Of a stretch of 64,000 nt of DNA, positions 1 to 47,151 are shown one piece after another. Where the stretch lies: IMG/VR virus record IMGVR_UViG_3300035703_000006, positions 1 through 64,000 of that record. One strand, given 5' to 3'. The notes under the pieces were generated by a model. The model made no database searches. It was not told the origin of the DNA and worked only from the letters and a program-made list of their open reading frames with translations. The translations under genes and the position numbers were made by a program. The stretch's first letter is position 1; every line of letters begins with the position of its first letter.

Positions 1-118
1 GATTTATATTACCCAGAATGGCATTACTCTTATGCTTTGGGTGAAACGAGAATAGGTAAAAACAAATCAGAAGTTGGAAACAAACCAAAAGAGTCTCACG
101 AGATTCTAGTGGTAAAAG

Positions 119-177
119 TGTGACACTCGTAGCACTGGCACACTAAACCCCCACAGCACCCCCTGATGCCCTATAAT
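119..177 (+). promoter_or_regulatory. Early promoter cassette 1
   Basis: TGTGACA(119-125)-N10-TGGCACA(136-142)-CTAAA; TATAAT at 172-177; no -35 hexamer. Confidence 0.8.
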
Positions 178-203
178 ACAGGGACACAAGCAAAGGAGAC
201 CTG

Positions 204-455
204 ATGATTGCTTCTGAGGTGTTTCATTACACTACTTCCCGTTGGGATTGGATTGATTGTAATGTGAATCAGATGTGGATTGAAGAGATTGAGGAATCTC
301 CTGATTGTTACAAGTACGTTGCTGTTGCTTACAATCCTCGCAAGGATGCAAGTATGGTGATGAGTGAACCTCGTTGCTACGCAGATACCCTAAATTGGGT
401 TCGTAGTTGGTGCAATTCTTTCTGCATCCTTCCTGAGTTCTCTGTTGCTGTTTGA
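204..455 (+). CDS. Hypothetical early protein (83 aa)
   Basis: ORF directly after cassette 1, with AAGGAG RBS upstream. Confidence 0.8.
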   Translation: MIASEVFHYTTSRWDWIDCNVNQMWIEEIEESPDCYKYVAVAYNPRKDASMVMSEPRCYADTLNWVRSWCNSFCILPEFSVAV

Positions 456-457
456 TT

Positions 458-838
458 ATGACTTTCACCTTTCCTCGTGTTTCTGCTGGCATCTACGAAG
501 TCCAGAAGGATTCTAATACTGTTGGATTCATTCGTAAAGCAACTGCTTCTAAGTGGATTGTAACTGATGTTGTAGACACTCCTCAACACGTTACAAAGAC
601 TCTTAAGGATGCAAAGGATGCTTGTATCAACCTGATTATCTTTGAGAGTGTTGACAACACTCCTGAAGATGTGTATAATGACTCTGTGGAGGTTGATAAG
701 GTTAATGCTGAACTCAATAAGGTTCTTGAGGGTTCTTTGAGAACCTATAGGCAGATTCCTGGGACTGATGAGTTTGAGGAAGTATGTCCGAGTAAGTTTG
801 GATTTGCTGAACCTACTCTAGAACCTATTGTGTTCTAA
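458..838 (+). CDS. Hypothetical early protein, acidic C-terminus
   Basis: ATG at 458, coupled to the upstream stop. Confidence 0.75.
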   Translation: MTFTFPRVSAGIYEVQKDSNTVGFIRKATASKWIVTDVVDTPQHVTKTLKDAKDACINLIIFESVDNTPEDVYNDSVEVDKVNAELNKVLEGSLRTYRQIPGTDEFEEVCPSKFGFAEPTLEPIVF

Positions 839-931
839 TGACTTATTTTGTAGTTTATTTGATACTTCTTAGTATCGCACTGGTTTTTAATTACTCTCTT
901 CATTCAGTTAATCCAAAGGACGACGATTAAA

Positions 932-1066
932 ATGCACGATTCTACTCTTGACCTGTTTTGTGAACACGAGTCTGCTGAGTATGCAGATGAGTATGCACTG
1001 GAGATTGAAAGGAAAGCAGCAGAACTTGAAGTAACTGTTGATTATTATATGGCAGAGTTTATGTGA
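932..1066 (+). CDS. Small acidic hypothetical protein (44 aa, ...EIERKAAELEVTVDYYMAEFM)
   Basis: Hand-translated, below the ORF-track cutoff; AAGGA RBS; resembles a small-ORF family I recall from cyanophages. Confidence 0.7.
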   Translation: MHDSTLDLFCEHESAEYADEYALEIERKAAELEVTVDYYMAEFM

Positions 1067-1070
1067 TCTC

Positions 1071-1129
1071 TGTGCCACTTCTGAGACCGTCCAGCACTCT
1101 TCCCGAACTAACGGGAGGGGTGCTATAAT
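1071..1129 (+). promoter_or_regulatory. Early promoter cassette 2 (degenerate right arm)
   Basis: TGTGCCA 1071-1077; TGCTATAAT 1121-1129; same 53-nt offset as cassette 1. Confidence 0.75.
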
Positions 1130-1159
1130 GTATGAATACAAACGTGATTTGATTTATTG

Positions 1160-2395
1160 ATGCTGACTCTTCTTCCTTATCAACAACGTGCTCTTGATGC
1201 TGTGCAGAAAGCAATCAGGGGTTCTGTCTATATTCCTACTGGTGGTGGGAAAACTGTTGTGATGATGGAAGATGCCCGTCAACGTGTTCTTAATGCACAA
1301 GAACCGATGACGTTTGTTGTTGTTGCACCTCGTATTCTGCTTGCAAATCAACTCTGTTCAGAGTTCGAAACATATCTCAAAGACCAGAATGTTGCTTATA
1401 TGCACGTTCATAGTGGAGAAACTCATCATCAATCCTCTACACGTCCAGCAGTCATTGCAGAATACAATGACATTGCAACTGGAAGTGGAAAGCATCAGTT
1501 TATCTTCACCACATACAATTCAATTCAACGGGTGAATGATGCAGATATTAACATTGATGTTGTGTATTTTGATGAAGCACATCATTGTGTGAAACCATCT
1601 AACTTTGTGGGTATTGCTCATACTTCAGCAGTTGCAGAAAATGCTTATTTCTTCACTGCAACTCCGAAGTTCAATAATAGCACTGAGTCAATGAATAATA
1701 CTGATGTTTATGGTAACAACATCATCAGTATTCCTGCACAAGAACTGATTGAAGCAGGTAGTATCATTCCTCCTAAAGTTGTGCCTTATGAAGCACAAAC
1801 GATTCGCACTAAGGAAAATGCTCCTTTTGTAGATGCAGAGAACATTGTAGGTATTCTGTCAGAGATTTCTGATTGTGATGCACCTAAAGTTCTTGTTGCT
1901 GCACCAAGTACCAAAGTGATTTGGTCTATGTTTACTGAAAGTGATTTGCTGCAACAACTCAATGATATGGGTTACACAATTATGCACATTACTTCTAAGC
2001 ATGGTGCTTATATCGACAAACAGAAAGTTTCTCGTGAAGTGTTCTTCGAGAAGATGAATGAGTTTGGTGCTGACCCAGACAAGAAGTTCATTGTGTTTCA
2101 CTATTCCATTCTGAGTGAAGGAATAAATGTTCATGGTTTGACTCATTGCATCATGCTTCGCAATCTTCCTGCGATTGAAATGTGTCAAACGATTGGTCGT
2201 GTGATTCGTATGCACCAAGATGACCGACAAGCAATCGCAGATGGTAAGATGAAAGCAGGAGAGTTTGCTTTTTACAGGAAACCTTTTGGTACTATTACGA
2301 TTCCTGTCAATAACAACTATGGTGATAAGATTGCAAAACAACTTCAGAATGTGATTGATGCAGTATTTGTAAAAGGTGAAGTTCCAGTTGCATAA
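1160..2395 (+). CDS. Superfamily 2 DEAH-box helicase (ResIII/DEAD-like)
   Basis: Motif I PTGGGKT, motif II DEAH, motif III TATP, motif VI QTIGRVIR. Confidence 0.9.
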   Translation: MLTLLPYQQRALDAVQKAIRGSVYIPTGGGKTVVMMEDARQRVLNAQEPMTFVVVAPRILLANQLCSEFETYLKDQNVAYMHVHSGETHHQSSTRPAVIAEYNDIATGSGKHQFIFTTYNSIQRVNDADINIDVVYFDEAHHCVKPSNFVGIAHTSAVAENAYFFTATPKFNNSTESMNNTDVYGNNIISIPAQELIEAGSIIPPKVVPYEAQTIRTKENAPFVDAENIVGILSEISDCDAPKVLVAAPSTKVIWSMFTESDLLQQLNDMGYTIMHITSKHGAYIDKQKVSREVFFEKMNEFGADPDKKFIVFHYSILSEGINVHGLTHCIMLRNLPAIEMCQTIGRVIRMHQDDRQAIADGKMKAGEFAFYRKPFGTITIPVNNNYGDKIAKQLQNVIDAVFVKGEVPVA

Positions 2396-2422
2396 ATTAT
2401 ATTATGTGTGACAAATAGAATT

Positions 2423-2587
2423 ATGCCTTTTACAAAGAAGTTTCCACAATCAGGAGAAACAATTCACATTCGAGTTCCAAAGTGTTATGCTGAACTAATT
2501 GAGGAATTGATGGTAACTTTAGATGCACGATTTGATGTAGAAAAAGGAAAACATCTTCTTCATAAGTTCATACACAATCTCACCTGA
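2423..2587 (+). CDS. Small ribbon-helix-helix-like DNA-binding protein, paralog A (54 aa)
   Basis: Hand-translated MPFTKKFPQSGETIHIRVPKCYAELIEELMVTLDARFDVEKGKHLLHKFIHNLT; strand-helix-helix pattern; similar to 10936..11100. Confidence 0.6.
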   Translation: MPFTKKFPQSGETIHIRVPKCYAELIEELMVTLDARFDVEKGKHLLHKFIHNLT

Positions 2588-2659
2588 GTCTTGAGAGTCG
2601 TTGTGCCAGTTGTAGTGGTGGCACACTAAATGAGCACTGACCCGTGATTGTGGTATAGT
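2585..2659 (+). promoter_or_regulatory. Early promoter cassette 3
   Basis: TGAGTC 2585-2590; TGTGCCA 2602-2608; TGGCACA 2619-2625; TGGTATAGT 2651-2659. Confidence 0.8.
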
Positions 2660-2683
2660 AGTTCTATGGTTGAGGAAGACCCG

Positions 2684-2851
2684 ATGACTTACGCACCACA
2701 CATTCCACATAACATTCCTTATTTGCTTGTTCCTGAGAATCGAGTAAAGTGTGTTTTTGATTGGTATAAGAGAGGGCAAGACCATCCAATGAACTTTCCT
2801 GCTTATGCTTATTGGATTCAAAAATGTGAAAGTGATGGGAGTGATTACTGA
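2684..2851 (+). CDS. Hypothetical early protein (55 aa)
   Basis: ATG 2684 after GAGGA RBS, downstream of cassette 3. Confidence 0.7.
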   Translation: MTYAPHIPHNIPYLLVPENRVKCVFDWYKRGQDHPMNFPAYAYWIQKCESDGSDY

Positions 2852-3043
2852 ATGACTACTCAAACTCTACTCAACAAAGTTCTAATGATTGAAGAATTGC
2901 TCAACGAAAAGCAACTCACTGCACTGCGTGATATGCTTTATGTGTATAAAGAACTTCAGAGTGAGGTTCATAATTATCCTCCTGAAGATACTTTGTTCAC
3001 TCAAACTCAATTTGAAATCTTTGACATTTTCGACATCAAATGA
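2852..3043 (+). CDS. Hypothetical early protein
   Basis: Abutting ORF in operon. Confidence 0.7.
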   Translation: MTTQTLLNKVLMIEELLNEKQLTALRDMLYVYKELQSEVHNYPPEDTLFTQTQFEIFDIFDIK

Positions 3044-3249
3044 CTTCAATCTCTTTTACATCTGGTGAGTTGCTTGATATTATCAAAACACTTGAGGAAA
3101 AAGAAAATCTTGCCTACCTGGTAGATTATGACCCAGGACTTGCTGCTTATTATATGAATCTTGGAAATCAATTCCAAACAATCTATGATAAGTTGCAAGA
3201 ACTCCCTGGAGAGTCTAGAGTTGCCAATCTTGTCCTTGCTGTAAATTGA
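3040..3249 (+). CDS. Hypothetical early protein
   Basis: ATGA stop/start overlap with the previous ORF. Confidence 0.7.
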   Translation: MTSISFTSGELLDIIKTLEEKENLAYLVDYDPGLAAYYMNLGNQFQTIYDKLQELPGESRVANLVLAVN

Positions 3250-3515
3250 TGATGGAAAAGCACAATCTGGTTATTCTTTCCACTGCACACCTGCATCCAT
3301 TGGAAGCAGCAAAGATTGATGAGTTTGCTTATGTTGGAAACAAAGAGTGTGCTCTTGTTAATACATCTCCAGAGATGAGAGATTTTTATTATCAAGGTGG
3401 ATTGGTTTGTTTGTGCGACCTTCTAAAAGAAGTGCAAGAAAAGCACAATGCAGATTATGTGTTGTTTGACCCCGATGCAAACACTACTGATGGGTTTAAG
3501 TATTATGATTGGTGA
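3249..3515 (+). CDS. Hypothetical early protein
   Basis: TGATG coupling; ends directly at cassette 4. Confidence 0.7.
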   Translation: MMEKHNLVILSTAHLHPLEAAKIDEFAYVGNKECALVNTSPEMRDFYYQGGLVCLCDLLKEVQEKHNADYVLFDPDANTTDGFKYYDW

Positions 3516-3575
3516 TGTGCCAGTCGTAAAGGTGGCACATTAGACAATCCAATGGGGCACTTGATGCCCTATAAT
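3515..3575 (+). promoter_or_regulatory. Early promoter cassette 4
   Basis: Perfect ATGTGCCA-N10-TGGCACAT 3515-3540; TATAAT 3570-3575. Confidence 0.8.
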
Positions 3576-3596
3576 GACTTCATACGCAACCAACTG

Positions 3597-3788
3597 ATGA
3601 CTTACGATGAAGTTTATGAAATGATTTGCCGTATGGAAACGTATGGTGGGTCATTTGTTGTTGCACTTGCTGGTGCAATGCGAAAAGCAGATGCCTCTAA
3701 TAAAAATAGATTGATTCTTGCATTTCCTGAATATGTGCAAGAATATGGTCCTGATAGCAAGTTCCCTGTCCCTACTAAGTCTCTGTGA
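3597..3788 (+). CDS. Hypothetical early protein (63 aa)
   Basis: ATG 3597 downstream of cassette 4; motif YGGSFVxALAxAxxxADxxN. Confidence 0.75.
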   Translation: MTYDEVYEMICRMETYGGSFVVALAGAMRKADASNKNRLILAFPEYVQEYGPDSKFPVPTKSL

Positions 3789-3958
3789 ACTACCTTTGTT
3801 TGGTTGATGGTCTGCTAGAATATGCTAGCACCAGTCCCTCAAACTTTGCACATTATCAGTTAATGTATTCTGAAGAGCATAGAAATGCTGATGTTCAGTT
3901 TCTTACTTTGACTGATGAGGAGTATGATGAAATGTTCCCTTATGAGGAGGATGAATGA
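3785..3958 (+). CDS. Hypothetical acidic protein (57 aa)
   Basis: Hand-translated; GTGA overlap with the previous stop; MNYLCLVDGLLEY...EEDE. Confidence 0.65.
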   Translation: MNYLCLVDGLLEYASTSPSNFAHYQLMYSEEHRNADVQFLTLTDEEYDEMFPYEEDE

Positions 3959-4134
3959 AACCTAAGTTCCGTGTTATTCTTGAAATGGCAATTGAACAAG
4001 GTGTTCAACGTGGTTGGCGTCTTGCTCATAAACATGTAGAGAATCCAGAAGAGCATGTAATCATTGAACGTATCAATGATTCTGTAATGTCTGAAATCTA
4101 CGAATACTTTACTTTTGAGGATGAGAATTTCTGA
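3955..4134 (+). CDS. Hypothetical protein (59 aa)
   Basis: Hand-translated; ATGA overlap; MKPKFRVILEMAIEQGVQRGWRLAHKH... Confidence 0.7.
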   Translation: MKPKFRVILEMAIEQGVQRGWRLAHKHVENPEEHVIIERINDSVMSEIYEYFTFEDENF

Positions 4135-4556
4135 TGTTGAAAACTAAAATGAATCCTGAAGTTAAGCAGAAGTGGATTGATGCTCTGCGTTCTGGTGATT
4201 ATGAGCAAGGTAGTGAGAAACTCCGTGGTGTAAATGGTTATTGTTGCCTTGGTGTTCTTTGTGACATTTATGCACGAGAACATGATACTCAATGGGAGTT
4301 CAGGGGTTATGATGAACTTAGTGATGAATCTAATCCACATCCAATGGATTATTGGTATTTTGATGACCAAAGTGAGTTTCTACCTAAAATTGTGATGAAT
4401 TGGGCAGGATTGAAAACTCATAATCCTTCAGTGAGAGTTGATATTGAAGATAATTTTGGTGATGATAATTCTTTTTATACCGATGAGATTGCCAATGTGA
4501 ACGATTCGGGTTATACTTTTATGGACCTTTCTAAAATTATCGAACAACAACTCTGA
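4134..4556 (+). CDS. Hypothetical phage protein with YCCLGVLC motif
   Basis: 140-aa ORF coupled to both neighbours. Confidence 0.75.
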   Translation: MLKTKMNPEVKQKWIDALRSGDYEQGSEKLRGVNGYCCLGVLCDIYAREHDTQWEFRGYDELSDESNPHPMDYWYFDDQSEFLPKIVMNWAGLKTHNPSVRVDIEDNFGDDNSFYTDEIANVNDSGYTFMDLSKIIEQQL

Positions 4557-4744
4557 TGCAAGAAGATAACACTCTGTCTCAAGGACGCATTGCAACTCAC
4601 AAATCTGTGAATGTTGCTATCTATTTCAATGATGAAATGGATGATGGTGAAGTGCGAGACTTCATTGAACGTGCCCTTGAAAAGTATCAACATCCAGATG
4701 ACATTGTGAAAAACTATGAATACTGGTATGATGTTGAGTCTTAA
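4556..4744 (+). CDS. Hypothetical protein
   Basis: TGATG coupling. Confidence 0.7.
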   Translation: MQEDNTLSQGRIATHKSVNVAIYFNDEMDDGEVRDFIERALEKYQHPDDIVKNYEYWYDVES

Positions 4745-4811
4745 GTGAGAATGTGCCAGTTGTAGCACTGGCACACTATATCCCCCAAACCCCTGCTGGT
4801 GGTGCTATGAT
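4735..4811 (+). promoter_or_regulatory. Early promoter cassette 5
   Basis: TGAGTC 4735-4740; TGTGCCA 4752-4758; TGGCACA 4769-4775; TGCTATGAT 4803-4811. Confidence 0.8.
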
Positions 4812-4832
4812 GAACGGAGTTCAAAGAAACCA

Positions 4833-5264
4833 ATGATCTCTCTGCGGAATCCAATTATGGAAATCAACTACAAAGAAGTTTATTCTCAGAAAACTGCGAA
4901 TAAAATTGAAGAATTGGTTGCTGAATCTTATTGTCTTGAGGACATTGTAGAGTTCATTGAAGAAAACTCTGAAGAAGATTTCTGTAATCTTTATGAAGAG
5001 TATGTGAATGTTGGTGAGCAGTATTCTTATGGTGCTGTAGATGCCTTCATTGAAGAGTTTGGTCTTCAATCTTTCACTGCCACTTGCTTTGAAGATGCTT
5101 ACCGAGGACAATGGGAATCTAAAGCAGATTATGCTGAAAACTATGTCACTGATTGTTATTCTATAGATCTGCCTGGTTTCCTGGAGATTGACTGGGAAGC
5201 AACATTTGATAATCTGGATGTGACCATCACTGAGAATGGTTATGTGTTCGACACTCAATTCTGA
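4833..5264 (+). CDS. ArdA-like antirestriction (DNA-mimic) protein
   Basis: Very Asp/Glu-rich; C-terminus YRGQWESKADYA...FLEIDWEATFDNL...NGYVF matches the ArdA C-terminal pattern; first gene after cassette 5. Confidence 0.6.
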   Translation: MISLRNPIMEINYKEVYSQKTANKIEELVAESYCLEDIVEFIEENSEEDFCNLYEEYVNVGEQYSYGAVDAFIEEFGLQSFTATCFEDAYRGQWESKADYAENYVTDCYSIDLPGFLEIDWEATFDNLDVTITENGYVFDTQF

Positions 5265-5267
5265 ACT

Positions 5268-5420
5268 ATGAAACTTTATCTTCAAGACAAGGCAGTTGAA
5301 TTGATTCTCTATTGCTTGGAACAACAAGCAAGTGAGTTCAATGAGGAAGAAATGAAGGATTATGAACATATCCTTCATTCCATTGAAATTGCAAATGATT
5401 CTGTTGATTTCAATTTCTAA
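5268..5420 (+). CDS. Hypothetical protein (50 aa), paralog of 10226..10387
   Basis: Hand-translated; LILYCLEQQASEFNEEE. Confidence 0.65.
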   Translation: MKLYLQDKAVELILYCLEQQASEFNEEEMKDYEHILHSIEIANDSVDFNF

Positions 5421-5686
5421 TGATGCCTGATTTTCCTACAATTCAATCTAAGGATGGCACTATGATAGTGTCATTTTATCCAGTCAAAACACCATTTGGT
5501 GATATATCTGAGACCTGGACATTTAAGGTTCTTGAGTGGAAAGGTATTGAGACAATCTCCAAGAGGTTCATTAACAAAGTTGAGAAAAAAGTTCAACTTA
5601 GGGAATATGAATCTTTTGGTTATGTTTTTGTAAAAGACAATGCGGATCTTCCGCAACTTGGTAATCCTATGGCAGGTGCTGTGTAA
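5420..5686 (+). CDS. Hypothetical protein
   Basis: TAATG coupling. Confidence 0.7.
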   Translation: MMPDFPTIQSKDGTMIVSFYPVKTPFGDISETWTFKVLEWKGIETISKRFINKVEKKVQLREYESFGYVFVKDNADLPQLGNPMAGAV

Positions 5687-5901
5687 TGTTATTTCAATTA
5701 ACTGATATTGAGTTTGATTTTGATGATGGTGAGGAAATCTCTGGAGAACTTCCTTATGATGAACAAGTTGCAGTTGCTCAATCTGTCATTGGTGAAGTTT
5801 TTGATGTCGAATCTGAAGATGACCTTGCCGATGCAGTTAGTGATTACACTGGTTGGTGTGTGAAATCTCTTAATTATGTTGCAATCTCTGAATCTCACTG
5901 A
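5686..5901 (+). CDS. Hypothetical acidic protein
   Basis: TAATG coupling; highly acidic. Confidence 0.7.
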   Translation: MLFQLTDIEFDFDDGEEISGELPYDEQVAVAQSVIGEVFDVESEDDLADAVSDYTGWCVKSLNYVAISESH

Positions 5902-5902
5902 A

Positions 5903-6097
5903 ATGCCTGAAATGAATCGTGACCAACTGATTGAAGACTATATCCAGACACTCATTGAGAATATGGACTATAAGACAATGGAGTGTTTTGTTTATGATAC
6001 TCTGAAAGAGAATCTTTCTACCTACACTGATGAGGAACTTCTCACTGAAGTGGAAGAATACAATCCAGAACTCCTCGGTCTAGACGAATCTGCCTGA
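5903..6097 (+). CDS. Hypothetical acidic protein
   Basis: ATG 5903; its TGA is the start of cassette 6 (TGAGTC). Confidence 0.7.
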   Translation: MPEMNRDQLIEDYIQTLIENMDYKTMECFVYDTLKENLSTYTDEELLTEVEEYNPELLGLDESA

Positions 6098-6169
6098 GTC
6101 TAGTGTTGAGATGTGCCACTTGTTCTAGTGGCACACTAAATGAGCACAGACCCCAAAAGGTGCTATATT
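6095..6169 (+). promoter_or_regulatory. Early promoter cassette 6
   Basis: TGAGTC 6095-6100; TGTGCCA 6112-6118; TGGCACA 6129-6135; TGCTATATT 6161-6169. Confidence 0.8.
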
Positions 6170-6226
6170 AAGAGGGTGGAAGGGGTCAGACCCACCCACA
6201 AACGTCCAAACTCTATCTTAATCAAA

Positions 6227-6430
6227 ATGACTGCTGTTGTTGATTTCTCTAAGGATGTGATGCTCGGTATGCTTCGCAAGGGGCAAACTGGAACTCAGAT
6301 TCTGGACATTCTGAATGTTCTGGTTCCTGAGCAAACTGAACTCACTCGTGAGCAAGTTTGTGAGGATCTGGGCATTGCTGATTGTCCCGAGAATGATGAT
6401 GAGATTGCCCGTGCAATGTCTGCTGTCTGA
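6227..6430 (+). CDS. Hypothetical protein (67 aa)
   Basis: ATG 6227 after the cassette 6 leader. Confidence 0.7.
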   Translation: MTAVVDFSKDVMLGMLRKGQTGTQILDILNVLVPEQTELTREQVCEDLGIADCPENDDEIARAMSAV

Positions 6431-6528
6431 GTGATTAAATAGAAACGATAGAGGGCAAGTCCCTGTTATGTCCTGATGAGGCATATCACACTTGCTCCAT
6501 CAAAACAATTCCTTCATTATTGAAACCA

Positions 6529-6717
6529 ATGTTTGTTATTTGTCCCGCATCATTTGATCTGGTTGATGCAGAGTGGTTTGATAATGTTTATGAAGCAAAA
6601 GAAGAAGCACTCGACTGGAGTGTTGAACTTGCTGGTCGCAATGTGATTGTTTATGAGGCACTTGAAGATGATGATGGTGCTTATGACTTCAAACCCGTAA
6701 GTTCAATCTGTGCTTGA
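6529..6717 (+). CDS. Hypothetical acidic protein
   Basis: ATG 6529 (TTG 6520 is an alternative start). Confidence 0.7.
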   Translation: MFVICPASFDLVDAEWFDNVYEAKEEALDWSVELAGRNVIVYEALEDDDGAYDFKPVSSICA

Positions 6718-6863
6718 TGAAGACCTTAACATTCAAGGCACCAAATAAGATGAAGACTATAATTCTTATCTTTGCAGTTGCTTTTGTATTCTCTCCTGGA
6801 GTGCGAAATGCAACTGCAAATACTCTTTACAATGTTGCTGACATTATCAGCACAAATCGGTGA
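6717..6863 (+). CDS. Small putative membrane protein (48 aa)
   Basis: Hand-translated; hydrophobic stretch IILIFAVAFVF; its TGA starts cassette 7. Confidence 0.6.
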   Translation: MKTLTFKAPNKMKTIILIFAVAFVFSPGVRNATANTLYNVADIISTNR

Positions 6864-6935
6864 GTCCAGTGTTGAGATGTGCCACCTGTAGCACTGGCAC
6901 ACTAAACGGGCACTGGAACTTTTTTCTGGTAGATT
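6861..6935 (+). promoter_or_regulatory. Early promoter cassette 7
   Basis: TGAGTC 6861-6866; TGTGCCA 6878-6884; TGGCACA 6895-6901; TGGTAGATT 6927-6935. Confidence 0.8.
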
Positions 6936-6987
6936 AAGAGGGTGGAGGGGGTCAGTCCCACCCGAGTCCCAATCTCAATTCTTTACA

Positions 6988-7644
6988 ATGGATCGCACTC
7001 AAGTTATTGCAAAGATTCAGTCCATTCTGAAACTGCAAGAGAACACTACGTTTGATGGTGAAGCATCTGCTGCTGCTGCGATGATTGATAAACTCTGCAA
7101 GCAGTATGGTGTTACGATCAGTGAAGCAACTGAAACTCAAGTTCTCGATGAATCTTTTCTCAACTTCAAACGTGTAAATGTTGCACTGACAACTCTTCTC
7201 AATGCAATTGCATCTTTCTATGATGCAAAAGCATATATGAAGAATGGTGATACCAAATCTCTGCAAGTGATTGGTTCTGAAGCACAACAAATCCAAGTGC
7301 GTCTCTATTATGATTACCTGGTGCAGGTGATGGAGAAAGAAGCAGAAGTTGCACATCAAGCAGAAAAGATTATGTCTGCTCTGCAAGGTAAAGCAATGTC
7401 CCGTAGTTTCAAACTTAATTTCCGCAAGGCATTTGCAGATAATGTTGCTCTGCGTTTGCGTGAGATGAAAGAAGCAGAGGGACGAGTTCATGATGATGCT
7501 GATGCAGTGAAAAACAAACTCTCTGCAATGCGATTCGGACGTGCCAAGAAGATGAATGGTGCAAGTGGTGCTGGTGTTGGTAGTTCTGTTTCTTTGAATC
7601 GTCAAGCAACTGGTTCTGTGACCAAACAACTCTGTGGAGTGTGA
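6988..7644 (+). CDS. DUF2786-like domain protein
   Basis: N-terminus IAKIQSILKLQENTTFDGEASAAAAMIDKLCKQYGV matches the DUF2786 pattern; FRKAFA motif. Confidence 0.7.
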   Translation: MDRTQVIAKIQSILKLQENTTFDGEASAAAAMIDKLCKQYGVTISEATETQVLDESFLNFKRVNVALTTLLNAIASFYDAKAYMKNGDTKSLQVIGSEAQQIQVRLYYDYLVQVMEKEAEVAHQAEKIMSALQGKAMSRSFKLNFRKAFADNVALRLREMKEAEGRVHDDADAVKNKLSAMRFGRAKKMNGASGAGVGSSVSLNRQATGSVTKQLCGV

Positions 7645-7663
7645 GTTTCACACTCCTTTTTTT
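7636..7663 (+). terminator. Intrinsic terminator
   Basis: GGAGTGTGA-GTT-TCACACTCC 9-bp stem followed by T7, overlapping the stop of 6988..7644. Confidence 0.75.
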
Positions 7664-7684
7664 CCTTTAATTTTTTGATACGAG

Positions 7685-8017
7685 ATGAACGCACAACTTT
7701 CGATTGATGAGTGTAAAATTATGTGGGTTGTTGGAGCACTTGAACGACTTGCAACTTTAGGTTTGCTTGGTCCTGATGTTCCACTGAAACTTTCTGCTCA
7801 TGCAGTAGAAGATTATATTCAGATTGACGAGCATCGGGAACTTTTGTTTGAGTCAGATTTTGAGATTGCAAGTATTATGACTGCACTGATCAATGATGAA
7901 TGTGATCCAGAAGTTCAAGATCCTGAAGATACAAATCTTCTGATTGATCTTCTGCTAGAGTATAAGAATAATCGCACTGAGATTGTGAAGTATGCACTCT
8001 CTTATCAACTCATCTGA
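7685..8017 (+). CDS. Hypothetical protein
   Basis: 110-aa ORF; its TGA starts cassette 8. Confidence 0.75.
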   Translation: MNAQLSIDECKIMWVVGALERLATLGLLGPDVPLKLSAHAVEDYIQIDEHRELLFESDFEIASIMTALINDECDPEVQDPEDTNLLIDLLLEYKNNRTEIVKYALSYQLI

Positions 8018-8089
8018 GTCCAATGATACCCTGTGCCACTTGTACTGGTGGCACACTAAATGAGCACGGGGTTAAAAATGTGGTATTAT
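8015..8089 (+). promoter_or_regulatory. Early promoter cassette 8
   Basis: TGAGTC 8015-8020; TGTGCCA 8032-8038; TGGCACA 8049-8055; TGGTATTAT 8081-8089. Confidence 0.8.
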
Positions 8090-8148
8090 TAAAGGGTGGA
8101 GGGAGCAGGGGTGCCTGTCCCACCCACGAGACCCATTGTTTATTCTTT

Positions 8149-8727
8149 ATGACTTCTTTCACGATTGTTAAAAAAGGTGAAGAAATCAAGTTTGATTCTC
8201 AATTCACTGATGTGAATGAAGTGCGTAACTATCTGCGTGAGCAGATGTCTTACAACAACTTCGCAATGGATCTTGTTGAGAAGAAGAAAGTGTCTGCAAC
8301 TCAAATTGCTTGGATGCATTATCTTGCAACTCAAAGTGTAATTGATTCTCAAACTCCTGTTGAGTTTGGTCCTTACAAGCAACTTGTCAACAAGATGTAT
8401 GATGCAGGTGCATATCGAGCAACTAAGTTTCAAGTGCGACTGCCTGGAATTACTCTGAGCACTGTAACTAAAGGTGTCAATGTTGGTTGTGTTTATGTTT
8501 ATGAAAACAACCAATATGTTGGTAAAATTACTGCTACTGGTGATCTGATTGGTAACGTGAGTGAGGATGTTATCAATCTTCTGGAAGATGCCAATGATAA
8601 TCTCCTGCAACTGGCAAAGATTTATGGTCACGAGACTGGTACTTGTTCAATCTGTGCTCGCACACTGAATGATCCTCTCTCTGTTCAGATGGGAATTGGT
8701 CCTGTTTGTGCCAAACGACTCGGTTGA
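8149..8727 (+). CDS. DUF6011-like Cys/Zn-motif protein
   Basis: C-terminal GTCSICARTLNDPLSVQMGIGPVCAKRL; ATG 8149 lies downstream of cassette 8 (the track start at 8023 lies inside the promoter). Confidence 0.7.
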   Translation: MTSFTIVKKGEEIKFDSQFTDVNEVRNYLREQMSYNNFAMDLVEKKKVSATQIAWMHYLATQSVIDSQTPVEFGPYKQLVNKMYDAGAYRATKFQVRLPGITLSTVTKGVNVGCVYVYENNQYVGKITATGDLIGNVSEDVINLLEDANDNLLQLAKIYGHETGTCSICARTLNDPLSVQMGIGPVCAKRLG

Positions 8728-8756
8728 GTTCTTTATTCACTTTATTCCTCAAAACA

Positions 8757-9005
8757 ATGTTTGACCTTCTTAATTTTCAACCTCATTCAATTCCTGAATG
8801 TATTCAAGCACGATATAAGTTTGAGAATGATTGGGAGATTTCTGTTGTTGCGGGTCCACCGAATTGTGGATTATATGGTAATCTGAATGAGAATACTTAT
8901 GAAGTTGCTATTTTCCGACCGAATGGTAATATGACCGAAGATGTCAATGGTTGGAATACAAAACAAGAAGTCTCTGCGATGATGTGGGTGCTGTCTCAAC
9001 TCTAG
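8757..9005 (+). CDS. Hypothetical protein
   Basis: ATG 8757; ISVV...GLYG...YEVAI. Confidence 0.7.
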   Translation: MFDLLNFQPHSIPECIQARYKFENDWEISVVAGPPNCGLYGNLNENTYEVAIFRPNGNMTEDVNGWNTKQEVSAMMWVLSQL

Positions 9006-9054
9006 ACTCGCATACCCATCAGGGATGCTGATAGGTAGAACAATCGTAGACCCC

Positions 9055-9083
9055 TTGACAAACCCCCCGATCCGTGCTATGAT
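9055..9083 (+). promoter_or_regulatory. Canonical sigma70-type promoter
   Basis: TTGACA 9055-9060, 17-nt spacer, TG-C-TATGAT 9075-9083. Confidence 0.8.
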
Positions 9084-9105
9084 GAACGAAGTTCAGAGTC
9101 AAGAG

Positions 9106-9279
9106 ATGACCACTGCTCAACGGATGGAAAAGCAATTCTTTATTTCTTTCATCCGACTTGTTGATGAGGTTCAAGGTAAGCAAAAACTTCCTTCACAGAT
9201 TCAATCGAATCGTAAGTCTGTTTGGGTGAAGCAAACACAAAATCCTAAGCAAAAGAAAGATGCTCTTGCCCGAATCTAA
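9106..9279 (+). CDS. Hypothetical basic protein (57 aa)
   Basis: ATG 9106 after the promoter. Confidence 0.7.
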   Translation: MTTAQRMEKQFFISFIRLVDEVQGKQKLPSQIQSNRKSVWVKQTQNPKQKKDALARI

Positions 9280-9316
9280 ATCTTTCTTTCATCTGTCCCA
9301 CACAAACAAACAAGAA

Positions 9317-9481
9317 ATGCTGATCAAAACTGTTTTCGACGTTCAGACCAAACAACCTGGTTATGCTGTGTGTGATCCTCACACTGAACGTTGTGGTTTT
9401 GTGACTTACAACATTCTCAATGCAATTAAAGCAGGACAATGTAAGTCTTTCACTGAAGTCCAACAACTCATCAATGCCTGA
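9317..9481 (+). CDS. Hypothetical protein
   Basis: ATG 9317, in operon. Confidence 0.65.
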   Translation: MLIKTVFDVQTKQPGYAVCDPHTERCGFVTYNILNAIKAGQCKSFTEVQQLINA

Positions 9482-9632
9482 AATGTTTGAAGTTACTTAT
9501 CAAGTTCCTTACAACAATCAAGAGTGGAGAAGTCAATACTTCAATACTCGCAAAGAAGCACAATCAATGGTAGAGTTCTATCAATCTTGTGGTTCACCTG
9601 CTAAACTCATTGAACGTCAAGTCAGCAACTAA
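9474..9632 (+). CDS. Hypothetical protein
   Basis: ATG 9474; YQVPYNNQEWRSQYF...MVEFYQSCGSPA. Confidence 0.7.
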   Translation: MPEMFEVTYQVPYNNQEWRSQYFNTRKEAQSMVEFYQSCGSPAKLIERQVSN

Positions 9633-9737
9633 ATGAAACGCAAAGAAAAGATTCAACTACTCTCCAAAGCACAAATCGGCAATGATCTTCTACTCATTGC
9701 TCAAGCAATTCTCAATTCTCAAAAGGACAAGAAATGA
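9633..9737 (+). CDS. Small hypothetical protein (34 aa)
   Basis: Hand-translated; fills the gap exactly, with an ATGA overlap to the next ORF. Confidence 0.5.
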   Translation: MKRKEKIQLLSKAQIGNDLLLIAQAILNSQKDKK

Positions 9738-9928
9738 TTCTCATTCGCAAAGAAAATCACGGGTGCATTTATACGATTGATCCAGAATCCAATGAACTTT
9801 ATTATGCTCCTGTCTATCAAGATAACACTGTAAATCTTTCTGAGTTTGCACCAGTTGATCTTGATGATTATGATGATGTAAGTGAAATTGAATCTATTCA
9901 ACAACAACTTATTCAAGCAATCAAATGA
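9734..9928 (+). CDS. Hypothetical protein
   Basis: Coupled ORF. Confidence 0.7.
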   Translation: MILIRKENHGCIYTIDPESNELYYAPVYQDNTVNLSEFAPVDLDDYDDVSEIESIQQQLIQAIK

Positions 9929-10221
9929 AACAATCAGTTAAAGATGTTATTAATCAACTTGAAAAACTGAATCCAAACGAAACAATTTTTTCACTCATTT
10001 ATACAAAGAATGATGTGAAAGAACTAGAGCATTATGATCCAATTACAGGACAAATTGTTTATCCTTATAATGATGAACTCGCAGAACAGGTTTTGTCTAA
10101 TCTAGATTGTTATGATGTAATCTATGAAACGATTTACAAGTGTATGAATGATGAAGTTTCTTATCAAGTCGATCAATTAGCAAAGAAAGAAAACATTACT
10201 ATTGAACCTGCTTCTTACTAA
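9925..10221 (+). CDS. Hypothetical protein
   Basis: ATGA overlap. Confidence 0.7.
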   Translation: MKQSVKDVINQLEKLNPNETIFSLIYTKNDVKELEHYDPITGQIVYPYNDELAEQVLSNLDCYDVIYETIYKCMNDEVSYQVDQLAKKENITIEPASY

Positions 10222-10225
10222 TACA

Positions 10226-10387
10226 ATGCAAGAAACATTTGTAAGGTTAAGTGAAGATCAAATCAATTTGATTCTATTCACCTTAGAACAACAAGAGAGT
10301 GATTTCAATTCTGTTGAACAATCTCTATGTGAAGCAATCATTGATACTTTCACCACTGCTTTAGTAGAGTTAAACACTCAAGCATAA
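10226..10387 (+). CDS. Hypothetical protein (53 aa), paralog of 5268..5420
   Basis: LILFTLEQQESDFNSVE; last gene of the early block. Confidence 0.65.
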   Translation: MQETFVRLSEDQINLILFTLEQQESDFNSVEQSLCEAIIDTFTTALVELNTQA

Positions 10388-10390
10388 GAG

Positions 10391-10500
10391 ATTATTATCA
10401 TTTATAACAAAATAACGTTATAATTGATAATTCAATTAAATGTATTAAAAAACATAGTTTAGTGAATTGTGTTGATATGATGATAGTGTTATAAAACCTT
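10391..10500. other. Very AT-rich non-coding tract (candidate DNA-unwinding element)
   Basis: Counted 20 G/C in 110 nt, and 7 in the first 60 nt; contains TTATAAC-N8-GTTATAA. Confidence 0.5.
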
Positions 10501-10557
10501 CTTTTTATTGTCTTATATTCTCTCTAAACCCCTCTGGTTCTTGTTGTCTTGGCCTGC

Positions 10558-10617
10558 ATTATACCATAAGACCTAAAAAAAGTCAAGCACCTTACAGACT
10601 CTTCTAGGGGTGGCACA
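10558..10617 (-). promoter_or_regulatory. Leftward sigma70-type promoter carrying a TGTGCCA half-site
   Basis: Minus strand: TGTGCCA (10617-10611) ... TTGACT (10586-10581), 17 nt, TG-G-TATAAT (10563-10558); half-site 54 nt upstream of the -10, as in the cassettes. Confidence 0.75.
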
Positions 10618-10624
10618 AGGAGTT

Positions 10625-10654
10625 ATTGACAAAAACCTGTCAATACTTTATAAG
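10625..10654 (+). promoter_or_regulatory. Putative rightward sigma70-type promoter inside a palindrome
   Basis: ATTGACA-N6-TGTCAAT 10625-10644; TATAAG at 10649-10654, 17 nt after TTGACA. Confidence 0.5.
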
Positions 10655-10660
10655 AATGAA

Positions 10661-10697
10661 ACTCCTAAGACTCACACATCTTATGAGTCTTAGGAGT
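10661..10697. repeat. Perfect 14-bp inverted repeat
   Basis: ACTCCTAAGACTCA-N9-TGAGTCTTAGGAGT. Confidence 0.85.
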
Positions 10698-10884
10698 ATT
10701 TTGCTAGTTATTCCTGAGACTCACGATACTCAAACCACTTCAAAAACTGGCACATCGTATCATGAGTCTCACAGATTCGGGTGTAGACTTATAGGGTGGG
10801 TGGCAGAGGGAAGATCATCAAATACTGATAACTGATAAGAATTACCCAGAATCCAGTGATTGCAATACTTTTTCGGGGCATTAT

Positions 10885-10934
10885 AGTTTTGTCCCAAAAC
10901 CCCCTATAAATAACCCTAGTTTTGGGACAAAACT
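10885..10934 (+). promoter_or_regulatory. T4-type late promoter flanked by a 16-bp inverted repeat of self-palindromic arms
   Basis: AGTTTTGTCCCAAAAC (10885-10900) ... TATAAATA (10905-10912) ... GTTTTGGGACAAAACT (10919-10934); ATG at 10936. Confidence 0.75.
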
Positions 10935-10935
10935 T

Positions 10936-11100
10936 ATGAGACCTCAAAAGTATAAGAATTTAGGTGAAACTGAAAGAATGCGTGTACCCTTATGCAAGCA
11001 AATTACAAGTTTGTGTGATGCATTAGATAAAAAAGCAGAAGATGGTTATGATGTCGTTGCTTTATTAGATTCGTTCATTGAGAGCATACACAATATGTGA
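10936..11100 (+). CDS. Small ribbon-helix-helix-like DNA-binding protein, paralog B (54 aa)
   Basis: Hand-translated MRPQKYKNLGETERMRVPLCKQITSLCDALDKKAEDGYDVVAYLDSFIESIHNM; shares K[FY]xxxGETxxxRVPxC..LD with 2423..2587. Confidence 0.6.
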   Translation: MRPQKYKNLGETERMRVPLCKQITSLCDALDKKAEDGYDVVALLDSFIESIHNM

Positions 11101-11505
11101 ATCATTCGTTATTACTTATCAGTTCGTCTTATCATTCGTTATATCCTCGCAGTTCGTGCATACTTATCTCTTCGTCTTATGATTCGTTGTCTATACTTAA
11201 CATCATTATGAGTTCATTACACAACCCCCCATAATGTTTGCTATTTGAATCAACCAGTGCTATACTATTCATGATACTCAGTTTCTGACATAAACTGGTG
11301 TCGTCCTCTGAGTATCATTAATACCCTATGAGTTCGTTACACGACCCCCCATAAGGTTTGTTATTCTTATTGACCAGAACTATATTATTCGTGTCTCTCA
11401 GTTCGTGTTATAAACTGATGCCCTCCCTTCGTTATATCTAACCCCCCATATGGTTTCGTATTAGAATAAGGCAGTAATGAATATAAACTATTCGTGATTG
11501 TTCGT
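11070..11505 (+). repeat. Strand-biased TTCGT short-repeat (iteron-like) array
   Basis: 14 TTCGT copies counted on the + strand; the six at 11105-11187 are spaced 18,12,18,18,12 nt; no ACGAA seen in the interval. Confidence 0.75.
11207..11460 (+). repeat. Degenerate 120-bp tandem repeat (2 copies plus a partial third)
   Basis: TATGAGTTC.TTACAC.ACCCCCCATAA.GTTTG at 11207 and 11327; third ACCCCCCATA at 11441. Confidence 0.75.
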
Positions 11506-11736
11506 TTATTATAATTAAACAGCACTGTTTGACACTTATATTTTGTGTTGTTGTATTCTTATATCTAACCGATGCCCCCTATATAAAAACGCATCACTAC
11601 CCTAACCTACAACGGACCGAAAACGACCTTCAAATTGTCTTTCAAATAAAAAAATTTTACCCAATTTTTTTTTTCTTCCAAGGTTCACGCACAAAAAATA
11701 AAAAATGATATATAAGTTTAGAATTCAATAAAAAAG

Positions 11737-11895
11737 ATGACAATAAGATTAGAAATTGATGATTATGAAAAGGATCTTTTAATTGATACGATTCAACATA
11801 GATTGGATACGGACAAAATCCTAGTAATCAATAATAGTTTAAAAGAAGAACTCGAAGATCTTTTAAGGAAAGTGGAAGAAGATGAATACGTATAA
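11737..11895 (+). CDS. Hypothetical protein (52 aa)
   Basis: Hand-translated MTIRLEIDDYEKDLLIDTIQHRLD... Confidence 0.6.
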   Translation: MTIRLEIDDYEKDLLIDTIQHRLDTDKILVINNSLKEELEDLLRKVEEDEYV

Positions 11896-12052
11896 TATTT
11901 CAGTCAATGGAAATGAAATATTGAGTCAAGTGCCGCAGAATGATTTACAGGAAAATCTGAAAGTTATCAGAGGACTTGTATGGACATCTGGGGGAAATGA
12001 TGAGGACATTATAGTGTCTCTAAATAAAAACGAAGGCCATTGCAATGAATGA
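11882..12052 (+). CDS. Hypothetical protein (56 aa)
   Basis: Hand-translated MNTYNISVNGNEILSQVP...GLVWTSGG. Confidence 0.55.
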   Translation: MNTYNISVNGNEILSQVPQNDLQENLKVIRGLVWTSGGNDEDIIVSLNKNEGHCNE

Positions 12053-12068
12053 TTTGTAGTGGTAGAAT
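12040..12068 (+). promoter_or_regulatory. Putative sigma70-type promoter
   Basis: TTGCAA 12040-12045, 17 nt, TG-G-TAGAAT 12060-12068. Confidence 0.55.
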
Positions 12069-47146: not shown

Positions 47147-47151
47147 AAAAA

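What the first reader, a model, noticed from the sequence alone, without database searches (positions are those of the whole stretch)
2423..2587. Early RHH-like paralog A, co-transcribed with the helicase: candidate reader of the cassette palindrome
Seen: a 54-aa ORF below the track cutoff, directly after the DEAH helicase and ending on the TGA of cassette 3. It has the same length as paralog B and shares K[FY]xxxGETxxxRVPxC...LD, but differs in the predicted DNA-reading strand (TIHIRV versus TERMRV). Established: RHH specificity resides in this beta-strand. Inference: an early and a late paralog with different operators could form a two-step regulatory cascade, with A acting on TGTGCCA-N10-TGGCACA or TGAGTC and B on GTTTTG-N3-CAAAAC.
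Basis: partly seen in the sequence, partly recalled or inferred. Interest (0 to 1): 0.6.

Follow-up and report, generated by a model that had tools for sequence, protein, structure and literature searches.

The report
Small ribbon-helix-helix-like cyanophage DNA-binding protein
The 54-codon ORF is a real, strongly conserved gene for a new family of small, probably dimeric DNA-binding proteins in T4-like cyanophages, but it is unlikely to be the general reader of the repeated promoter cassette, because cultured phages carry that cassette without this protein family.

Summary
ORF A (2423-2587, 54 aa) follows the DEAH helicase and ends on the TGA of TGAGTC, 14 nt before the palindrome at 2602-2625. 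It has a 54-aa paralog, B (10936-11100; 35% identity).

- **Real gene:** A has 29 homolog clusters and 44 viral loci. Median dN/dS is 0.10.
- **No family match:** no Pfam, PHROG or NCBIfam model fits.
- **Predicted fold:** extended N-terminus plus two helices. The homodimer model pairs the two N-terminal strands antiparallel around I16, which is ribbon-helix-helix (RHH) topology.
- **DNA binding:** distant relatives carry the module in tandem, or fused to HNH and GIY-YIG-like nuclease domains.
- **Paralog B:** B sits behind a TATAAATA late promoter bracketed by inverted 16-bp repeats. The repeat centres co-vary with outward-facing strand residues.

A's own site is not identified. The best candidate is the dyad at 2403-2417.

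The cassette-reader idea meets its own refutation test. Synechococcus phage S-SSM7 has nine such cassettes, and S-SRM01 and S-SKS1 have a few, yet none encodes the family. The cassette looks like a PeSL-type stem-loop/promoter module.

Verdict: new RHH-like family, interpretation partly supported, moderate interest.

The parts
1121..1129 (+). Extended -10 box TGCTATAAT of the cassette-type promoter upstream of the helicase. It is the likely promoter of a helicase-A transcription unit.
   Evidence: Sequence. Most other cassettes carry the same TGnTATAAT-type box. The simple sigma-70 scan finds no promoter between the helicase and A.
1157..2395 (+). SF2 DEAH helicase, 412 aa. It is the upstream neighbour of A in most related loci.
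   Evidence: Pfam ResIII 1.2e-19, DEAD 6e-13, Helicase_C 7e-6. PHROG 16 'DNA helicase' 7e-68. T4 UvsW is not among its PDB matches.
2391..2398 (+). CATAAATT. It matches 7 of 8 positions of the cyanomyovirus late-promoter consensus NATAAATA and overlaps the helicase stop codon. Status uncertain.
   Evidence: Sequence. Relatives have TATAAATT or CATAAATC at this place. The consensus is taken from PMC2984593.
2403..2417 (.). Near-palindrome TATGTGT-G-ACAAATA (one mismatched pair), ending 5 nt before A's ATG. It is the best candidate for A's own operator.
   Evidence: A dyad sits at the same place, ending 4-6 nt before the ATG, in 14 of 24 distinct configurations (15 of 25 with L021): perfect in 6 and with one mismatch in 8. 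Only 2.3% of random 60-mers hold a perfect one anywhere. It does not fold as RNA (-0.4 kcal/mol). It is not more conserved than synonymous sites.
2423..2587 (+). ORF A, 54 aa (P0001). Predicted layout: N-terminal arm 1-12, strand about 13-19, helix 20-36, helix 39-53.
2585..2590 (+). TGAGTC, the 5' end of the cassette. It supplies A's stop codon.
   Evidence: TGAGTC lies 11-12 nt before the palindromes at 2602, 4752, 6112, 6878 and 8032. It gives the in-frame TGA of four of the five upstream ORFs. It is conserved after A in most loci.
2602..2625 (.). Cassette palindrome TGTGCCA-N10-TGGCACA.
   Evidence: 129 distinct copies in the loci fetched. It is also present in phages without the family.
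2651..2659 (+). Extended -10 box TGGTATAGT of the cassette promoter that serves the next gene.
   Evidence: Sequence. The same layout is seen in the other cassettes.
10885..10900 (.). Inverted repeat O1 (AGTTTTGTCCCAAAAC), upstream of B's late promoter.
   Evidence: pair I1: 16 nt, 100% complementary to 10919-10934. Conserved and co-varying across the family.
10905..10912 (+). TATAAATA, the T4-type late promoter of B.
   Evidence: [CA]TAAATA is kept at this place in 20 of 22 configurations. Consensus from PMC2984593.
10919..10934 (.). Inverted repeat O2 (GTTTTGGGACAAAACT), which ends 1 nt before B's ATG.
   Evidence: As RNA, O1 and O2 would pair at -22.4 kcal/mol, z -6.8.
10936..11100 (+). ORF B, 54 aa (P0002), the paralog of A.
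11101..11560 (+). Cluster of TTCGT repeats directly after B, inside a non-coding stretch of about 1.4 kb.
   Evidence: 12 copies in one 500-bp bin, against about 0.3 genome-wide, all on the + strand. Repeat families are listed. The cluster is present after close B homologs only.

Best explanation
ORF A is an expressed gene for a member of a previously unannotated family of small strand-helix-helix (ribbon-helix-helix-like) proteins of T4-like cyanophages.

**How it most likely works**
- Two A chains form an intertwined dimer. Their N-terminal strands (about residues 13-19) pair antiparallel.
- Side chains T13, H15 and R17, together with the invariant basic arm MPFTKKFP, would contact DNA.
- A most likely acts as a sequence-specific DNA-binding regulator. 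It would be made with the helicase from the cassette promoter at 1121-1129.

**Target**
- Its DNA target is not identified.
- The best candidate is the dyad directly before its own start codon (2403-2417). This follows paralog B, whose gene sits behind a late promoter bracketed by two inverted repeats that co-vary with B's strand residues.
- A is not the general reader of the TGTGCCA-N10-TGGCACA cassette. That cassette is a PeSL-type stem-loop/early-promoter module and works in phages that lack the family.

**Shown:** gene reality, paralogy, family spread, nuclease fusions, B's repeat architecture, and cassettes in genomes without the family.
**Predicted:** fold and dimer.
**Inferred:** DNA binding by A, its site, and its timing.
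For: **Conservation**
- 29 clusters, 44 loci and 37 representatives at E <= 0.001 in the full profile search.
- dN/dS is 0.10, and the N-terminal 19 codons are the most constrained part.

**Fold**
- The AF2 monomer has pLDDT 87.6: extended 1-19, then helices 20-36 and 39-53.
- Homodimer model: score 0.68, best of 3 controls 0.00. That mark was reached by 20 of 30 proteins solved as pairs of one chain and by 1 of 23 solved as single chains.
- The three runs agree in at least 93% of contacts, and the partner's pLDDT is at least 82.
- Contacts 16-16, 15-17, 18-14 and 20-13 describe an antiparallel ribbon. Contacts 46-25, 50-29 and 49-49 describe intertwined helices.
- The natural tandem protein P0046 folds with two DSSP strands, 13-19 and 77-83, each followed by helices.

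**DNA binding of the module**
- P0058 is an HNH domain (phrog_4234, E 5e-20) followed by one module.
- Seven B-family loci have an HNH domain fused in frame.
- P0051 has a GIY-YIG-like N-terminus and two modules.

**B's repeats**
- In 22 distinct configurations the strand class predicts the repeat centre without exception.
- O1 equals the reverse complement of O2 with no mismatch in 17 of the 22.

**A's dyad**
- A dyad lies 4-6 nt before the ATG in 14 of 24 distinct configurations.

**Against the cassette as target**

**Expression hints**
- Contigs from RNA libraries cover 2424-2574 and 2284-2471.
Against: - No sequence model of any RHH family matches.
- Fold searches are uninformative. Foldseek against the PDB gave nothing for A's model and E >= 2.9 for the tandem model. 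Foldseek against BFVD gave E >= 7. VIA-align gave Z <= 5.4 and the atlas search gave TM <= 0.38.
- The fold and the dimer are predictions only.
- A's dyad is missing in several lineages (L025, L032, L038, L033, L036, L042) although the reading strand is invariant.
- The dyad is degenerate in this window.
- The 22 nt before the ATG are not more conserved than third codon positions (0.48 against 0.57).
- The core TGT[GC]ACA is not enriched in the genome (14 found, 28 expected).
- B's O1/O2 could act as a nucleic-acid hairpin rather than as protein sites. In HNH-fusion loci the repeats stay complementary to each other but are no longer self-palindromic.
- The co-variation involves only about three clades.
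Confidence: 0.6

Rival explanations
1. A is made early and binds the cassette palindrome (or TGAGTC), feeding back on all early promoters. B acts later on GTTTTG-N3-CAAAAC.
For: - A ends inside a cassette in most loci.
- Most A-bearing contigs carry several cassettes.
- A's reading strand and the cassette arms are both invariant.
- Each arm (GTGCCAC / GTGGCAC in most copies) is close to a 7-bp dyad of the size that one RHH dimer reads.
- A's own dyad shares TGTG/CACA.
- The variant arm TGTGACA at window position 119 equals the core of the dyad at 2407-2413.
Against: - Complete genomes of S-SSM7 (9 cassettes), S-SRM01 (3) and S-SKS1 (2) have no family member.
- Four cassette-bearing contigs of 73-178 kb, plus a 128-kb contig from the cassette scan, also lack it.
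- An A-bearing 46-kb contig has no cassette.
- The cassette matches the published PeSL stem-loop/promoter concept, which needs no phage reader.
- The conserved CTTGT in the 5' half of the loop is not symmetric.
- The arm centres lie 15-17 bp apart and so are out of helical phase.
Confidence: 0.12
2. A is not a DNA binder. It is a small adaptor that uses its conserved N-terminal peptide to bind a protein, such as the neighbouring helicase or a host factor like RNA polymerase.
For: - The helicase-A gene order is kept in most loci.
- The N-terminal 19 residues are nearly invariant even where the nearby DNA motifs differ.
- No target site could be fixed.
Against: - The module is fused to HNH and GIY-YIG-like nuclease domains, and occurs in tandem, as DNA-binding domains of homing endonucleases do.
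- A strong homodimer is predicted with its strands in the interface.
- A-like genes occur without the helicase (L036, L042-L044).
Confidence: 0.12
3. A and B are free-standing DNA-binding domains left over from, or captured by, homing endonucleases. They persist as site protectors or selfish remnants rather than as transcription regulators.
For: - In-frame HNH-B fusions occur in seven loci.
- Remnant linkers (KYKPKTIAGG-RPQKY...) occur without the HNH domain in L063 and L066-L068.
- Repeat sequences around the insertions look mosaic.
Against: - Purifying selection on A is strong, over dS of about 1.
- No A-type nuclease fusion was found.
- B's repeats bracket a promoter, which points to control of transcription.
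Confidence: 0.1
4. The fold is only a helical hairpin with a disordered N-terminus, and the RHH-like dimer is a modelling artefact.
For: The monomer model shows no strand. Fold searches return only generic helical hairpins such as ZapA and NblA at Z about 3.
Against: - The dimer score lies far above the controls.
- The tandem homolog has two paired strands.
- The alternation of hydrophobic (I14, I16, V18) and polar (T13, H15, R17) residues fits a strand.
Confidence: 0.06

Closest known systems
Arc/Mnt (phage P22), CopG, MetJ, omega: ribbon-helix-helix repressors
   Same: - About 50 residues.
- N-terminal strand followed by two helices.
- Predicted intertwined dimer with an antiparallel ribbon.
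- Alternating inward and outward strand residues.
- In paralog B, repeats at the gene's own promoter, as in autoregulated RHH repressors.
   Different: - No sequence match to any RHH model.
- There is a long, invariant N-terminal arm.
- The promoter bracketed by B's repeats is a T4-type late promoter, not a sigma-70 promoter.
- DNA binding is untested.
PeSL cassettes (promoter-early stem-loop) of T4-type phages (PMC2839356, PMC4122927)
   Same: - A stem-loop followed by an early sigma-70-like promoter, repeated between small ORFs of a variable region.
- Contigs of relatives diverge exactly at the palindrome (loose ends at 2602).
   Different: - The stem sequence TGTGCCA/TGGCACA, the conserved CTTGT in the loop and the TGAGTC stop module are specific to this cyanophage group.
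- No U-tract follows the stem.
- This concerns the cassette, not ORF A.
Modular DNA-binding domains of free-standing HNH and GIY-YIG homing endonucleases (for example the I-TevI type or NUMOD modules; recalled from memory)
   Same: Homologs of the A/B module sit C-terminal to HNH and GIY-YIG-like nuclease domains, singly or in tandem.
   Different: A and B themselves carry no nuclease domain. No sequence relation to NUMOD modules was tested.
TraY and other tandem RHH proteins
   Same: P0046, P0051 and P0071 carry two modules in one chain. The P0046 model has two strands. The weak best Foldseek hit is a chain of the F-plasmid relaxosome (E 2.9).
   Different: The match is not significant, and A is a single module.
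T4 UvsW.1 (small gene directly after the uvsW helicase; recalled from memory)
   Same: A small ORF directly downstream of an SF2 helicase gene.
   Different: T4 UvsW is not among the helicase's PDB matches, and the profile search of the PDB shows no UvsW.1 match. This is a positional analogy only.

Membership tests
Ribbon-helix-helix superfamily (Arc/MetJ/CopG) | About 45-55 residues with an N-terminal beta-strand followed by two alpha-helices | tested here: met
   AF2 gives an extended 1-19, then H20-36 and H39-53, at pLDDT 87.6. The tandem homolog shows E13-19 and E77-83, each followed by helices. Prediction only.
Ribbon-helix-helix superfamily (Arc/MetJ/CopG) | Intertwined homodimer in which the two N-terminal strands form an antiparallel two-stranded sheet | tested here: met
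   Homodimer score 0.68 against a best control of 0.00. Contacts 16-16, 15-17, 18-14 and 20-13 are centred on I16. Prediction only.
Ribbon-helix-helix superfamily (Arc/MetJ/CopG) | Sequence match to a curated RHH family model | tested here: not met
   Pfam gave 0 families at E <= 10. PF01402 gave no match in the whole genome. NCBIfam gave none. The PDB profile search gave only TCP15 at E 1.1.
Ribbon-helix-helix superfamily (Arc/MetJ/CopG) | Structure search recovers solved or annotated RHH proteins | tested here: inconclusive
   Foldseek gave nothing significant. VIA-align gave Z <= 5.4. NikA-like and ParG/56B_RHH clusters appear in the atlas list, but at TM about 0.3. Libraries of single chains suit an obligate dimer poorly.
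Ribbon-helix-helix superfamily (Arc/MetJ/CopG) | Sequence-specific DNA binding through the sheet in the major groove | not testable with these tools
   The evidence is indirect: nuclease fusions of the module, and co-variation of B's outward strand residues with the repeat centre.
Autoregulated RHH repressor | Repeated or palindromic operator at the gene's own promoter | tested here: inconclusive
   Met for B. For A a dyad precedes the ATG in 14 of 24 configurations. It is absent in several lineages and is not better conserved than synonymous sites.
PeSL-type regulatory cassette (for the cassette next to A) | Stem-loop plus early promoter, repeated between small ORFs of a variable region | tested here: met
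   Eight copies lie at the two ends of the record, each with a -10 box, most of the TGnTATAAT type. There are 129 distinct copies in relatives. S-SSM7 has 9 palindromes, most with the same layout. The concept is from PMC4122927.
   S-SSM7, S-SRM01 and S-SKS1 carry cassettes but not the family. Four cassette-bearing contigs of 73-178 kb, plus a 128-kb contig from the cassette scan, lack it. The same profiles find A and B in the window's own genome.
T4 UvsW / UvsW.1 pair | The upstream helicase is a UvsW homolog | tested here: not met
   The only PDB matches of the helicase are MDA5-type helicase domains at E about 1e-5.

The most novel reading that the evidence does not exclude
A and B would be the first site-specific transcription factors recognised in T4-like cyanophages, which lack MotA and AsiA. 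B would be an autorepressor that clamps a gp55-type late promoter between two operators. A would be an early-made paralog with a different reading strand that times a set of phage promoters. The same DNA-binding module would have been captured by HNH homing endonucleases to target these loci.
Probability: 0.15. Interest if true: 0.75.

Novelty: new member of a known kind. Interest (0 to 1): 0.45.

Why it matters
How T4-like cyanophages switch between early, middle and late transcription is unsettled, because they lack motA and asiA (PMC2984593). A conserved, unannotated family of small DNA-binding proteins has one copy in the early cassette region. A second copy lies behind a late promoter bracketed by co-varying repeats. 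This gives concrete candidates and concrete DNA sites to test.

The analysis also shows that the repeated palindrome/promoter cassette of this phage group does not depend on this family. That redirects the search for its reader to host factors or to RNA structure. The nuclease fusions show a DNA-binding module shared between regulators and homing endonucleases.

Tried and rejected
**Searches that gave nothing useful**
- Family scans of A and B: none in Pfam or NCBIfam, and only one weak PHROG row for A (phrog_14046, E 0.065).
- Profile against PDB sequences: only chance-level rows, with TCP15 at E 1.1.
- Fold searches: Foldseek PDB, BFVD, VIA-align wide and the atlas shape search gave nothing significant.
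- ESM Atlas feature search returned only unnamed viral clusters.
- tblastn of A, of a B homolog and of a distant B-type against 50,697 phage records found no match.
- megablast of the first 12 kb found no match.
- Rfam on 1-12500 found nothing.

**Ideas tested and dropped**
- UvsW/UvsW.1 analogy: the helicase is not UvsW-like.
- An RNA hairpin at A's dyad: -0.4 kcal/mol.
- The cassette stem after A as a strong RNA structure: weak here (z -1.2), though the copy at 6112 is strong (z -3.9).
- Extra base pairing at stem position 8: only mildly above expectation, 68% Watson-Crick.
- Enrichment of the dyad core TGT[GC]ACA in the genome: none.
- Stronger conservation of A's upstream spacer than of synonymous sites: not found.

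**Ideas rejected from memory only**
- Sigma-54, CRP-type or NtcA-type sites for the palindrome were considered and set aside on spacing. No tool test was made.

**Limits of the RNA evidence**
- The RNA evidence consists of contigs from RNA libraries, so DNA carry-over cannot be excluded. They show no transcript ends or strand.

Full report
**Observation**

It runs from ATG 2423 to TGA 2585-2587 and codes for 54 aa. It starts 27 nt after the stop of a 412-aa SF2 helicase (1157-2395). The helicase matches ResIII/DEAD/Helicase_C and has the motif DEAH.

A's stop is the first triplet of TGAGTC. Eleven nt after that hexamer lies TGTGCCA-N10-TGGCACA at 2602-2625. The longer GTG-started reading (2408) is not conserved. 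Homologs share the N-terminus MPFTKKFP, which fixes the start at 2423.

Paralog B is at 10936-11100 and is also 54 aa. A and B align at 35% identity, E 6e-5 for the single comparison.

**Context**

The window is the first 64 kb of a 247,112-bp viral record. PHROG matches to gp6- and gp7-type baseplate proteins and to ferredoxin show a T4-like cyanomyovirus. The nearest cultured phages by gp6 are S-SCSM2R, Sf-FS3 and S-SSM7, at about 60% identity. Near-identical DNA occurs in freshwater, riverine and subsurface metagenomes.

The first 8 kb is packed with small ORFs separated by copies of the cassette. One further copy lies at 244005, so the early region wraps around the ends of the record.

**A is a real gene of an unannotated family**

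- The word search found 29 clusters at 59-96% identity.
- The viral collection gave 44 loci.
- The exhaustive profile search gave 37 representatives at E <= 0.001.
- Median dN/dS among 79 pairs is 0.10. The first 19 codons have dN 0.023 at dS 0.78.
- No Pfam or NCBIfam model fits; the only PHROG row for A is at chance level.
- RHH_1 (PF01402) finds nothing in the genome.
- The genome holds only two members, A and B.
- No match was found in 50,697 deposited phage records.

**Fold**

The AF2 monomer (pLDDT 87.6) has an extended N-terminus and helices 20-36 and 39-53.

The homodimer model scores 0.68, and the best of 3 controls scores 0.00. That mark was reached by 20 of 30 proteins solved as pairs of one chain and by 1 of 23 solved as single chains. 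The runs agree in at least 93% of contacts, and the partner's pLDDT is at least 82.

The least uncertain contacts (16-16, 15-17, 18-14, 20-13) describe two strands paired antiparallel about I16. Contacts 46-25, 50-29, 49-49 and 26-26 describe intertwined helices. This is the ribbon-helix-helix arrangement.

A natural tandem relative, P0046, folds with two DSSP strands (13-19 and 77-83), each followed by helices.

With I14, I16 and V18 facing inward, residues T13, H15 and R17 face outward. In B the outward residues are T12, R14 and R16.

Fold searches gave nothing decisive. This is expected for a very small obligate dimer compared with single chains. The fold therefore remains a prediction.

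**The module binds DNA in relatives**

- P0058 is an HNH domain (phrog_4234, E 5e-20) followed by one module.
- Seven B-family loci carry an HNH domain fused in frame to B's second codon. Four more loci keep only the linker.
- P0051 has a GIY-YIG-like N-terminus and two modules. P0046 and P0071 are tandem.

This is the pattern of a DNA-binding domain.

**Paralog B**

B homologs at 35-100% identity are preceded by a 16-bp repeat, a C-rich spacer with [CA]TAAATA, the inverted copy of the repeat, and then ATG. In the window these are 10885-10900, TATAAATA at 10905-10912, and 10919-10934. GTTTTG-N3-CAAAAC occurs nowhere else in the genome.

In 22 distinct configurations the strand class predicts the repeat centre without exception:

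| Strand class | Repeat centre |
|---|---|
| GEMSI[IVL]R | TTAA |
| GxG[VA]M[IV]R | [AC]TA[GT] |
| G[EP]TERMR | TCC |

The varying residues are the outward ones. This fits a dimer reading the repeat centre, with B repressing its own late promoter.

There are three caveats:
- About three clades carry the signal.
- O1 and O2 would also pair as a hairpin (-22.4 kcal/mol, z -6.8).
- In HNH-fusion loci the repeats remain complementary to each other but are no longer self-palindromic.

**A's target**

By analogy with B, the best candidate is the dyad that ends 4-6 nt before A's ATG. It reads CTATGTG-TCC-CACATAG or TATGTGT-C-ACACATA in relatives and TATGTGT-G-ACAAATA at 2403-2417 in the window. It is perfect in 6 and has one mismatch in 8 of 24 distinct configurations. 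Only 2.3% of random 60-mers hold a perfect one. In L044 a perfect ATGTGTCACAT lies about 16 nt upstream of the TATAAT box of the A-like gene.

The case is only moderate:
- Several lineages lack the dyad although the reading strand is invariant.
- The spacer is not better conserved than third codon positions.
- The core is not enriched in the genome.

**The cassette**

The cassette has a fixed order:
1. TGAGTC, which supplies the stop codon of four of the five upstream ORFs.
2. The palindrome, with a conserved and asymmetric CTTGT in the loop.
3. CTAAA-GAGCAC.
4. An extended -10 box.

This is the published PeSL idea of a composite stem-loop/early promoter that also serves as a recombination joint (PMC4122927). 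Consistent with that, contigs of relatives diverge exactly at 2602, and different genes follow the same cassette after A.

- S-SSM7 (complete genome, 9 palindromes at 41.8-51.1 kb, most with the same layout) has no family member at E <= 1 with two profiles. The same holds for S-SRM01 (3 cassettes) and S-SKS1 (2).
- The same profiles score A and B at 1e-18 to 1e-21 in the window's genome.
- Four cassette-bearing contigs of 73-178 kb, and a 128-kb contig taken from the cassette scan, also lack the family.
- One A-bearing 46-kb contig has no cassette.

A could still modulate cassettes in phages that have it, because the arms are close to its dyad core. But it is not their general reader.

**Expression**

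No sigma-70-type promoter or terminator was found between the helicase and A. CATAAATT at 2391-2398 is one base off the late consensus NATAAATA. Contigs from RNA libraries cover 2424-2574 (a relative) and 2284-2471 (identical, bridging the helicase end and A's start). These contigs show neither transcript ends nor strand and may contain DNA. Co-transcription with the helicase is therefore plausible but not shown.

**Verdict**

A is a new RHH-like family member and probably a DNA-binding regulator whose site is still open. The assignment of B to its repeats is well supported. The assignment of A to the cassette is not. The novelty lies in the family and in B's bracketed late promoter. Interest is moderate.

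Noticed in passing
window 10350-11800: A non-coding stretch of about 1.4 kb surrounds B. It holds 12 TTCGT repeats on one strand (11101-11560), a 120-bp tandem pair (11207-11446), and GACTCA/TGAGTC inverted repeats (10661-10697 and 10715-10771). It also holds the motif CCATAAGACC-N-AAAAAAGTCAAGCA (10564-10589), which recurs upstream of the A-like genes in L042 and L044. It may be a replication origin or a regulatory region.
   Followed up: partly
L061, L064, L084, L086, L093, L095, L097; remnants in L063, L066-L068: An HNH endonuclease domain is fused in frame to the second codon of B-family genes. In some relatives only the linker remains. The flanking repeats look mosaic, as expected after homing events.
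   Followed up: partly
NC_015287.1 (S-SSM7) 41862-51053; locus L226: The marine isolate S-SSM7 has nine copies of the same palindrome. Most are followed by a TATAAT-type box between small hypothetical ORFs. The cassette is therefore widespread in cyanomyoviruses and is not annotated there.
   Followed up: partly
window 2602 (also 2634-2637): Metagenome and RNA-library contigs of relatives match from the palindrome onward but carry different sequence before it. Joints link 2634/2637 to other cassettes (162, 4803). This fits recombination at cassettes.
   Followed up: partly
window 1-8000 versus 16000-48000: G+C is 39% in the early small-ORF region and 27-33% in the structural region.
   Followed up: no
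G000 244005-244028: One further cassette lies near the right end of the 247-kb record, so the early region spans the ends of the record (a circularly permuted or circular map).
   Followed up: no
window 17226-25604, 32504-37486, 39093-46565: Three giant ORFs of 2792, 1660 and 2490 aa. The first matches the PHROG baseplate-wedge and virion structural families.
   Followed up: no
window 1071-1129: The cassette before the helicase keeps the left arm TGTGCCA and the -10 box but lacks the right arm, so it is a half-cassette.
   Followed up: no
P0041 (126 aa): One database protein joins the first 40 residues of an A-type module to a fragment of an E1 dehydrogenase (PF00676, 3.6e-16). It is most likely an assembly chimera.
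   Followed up: no
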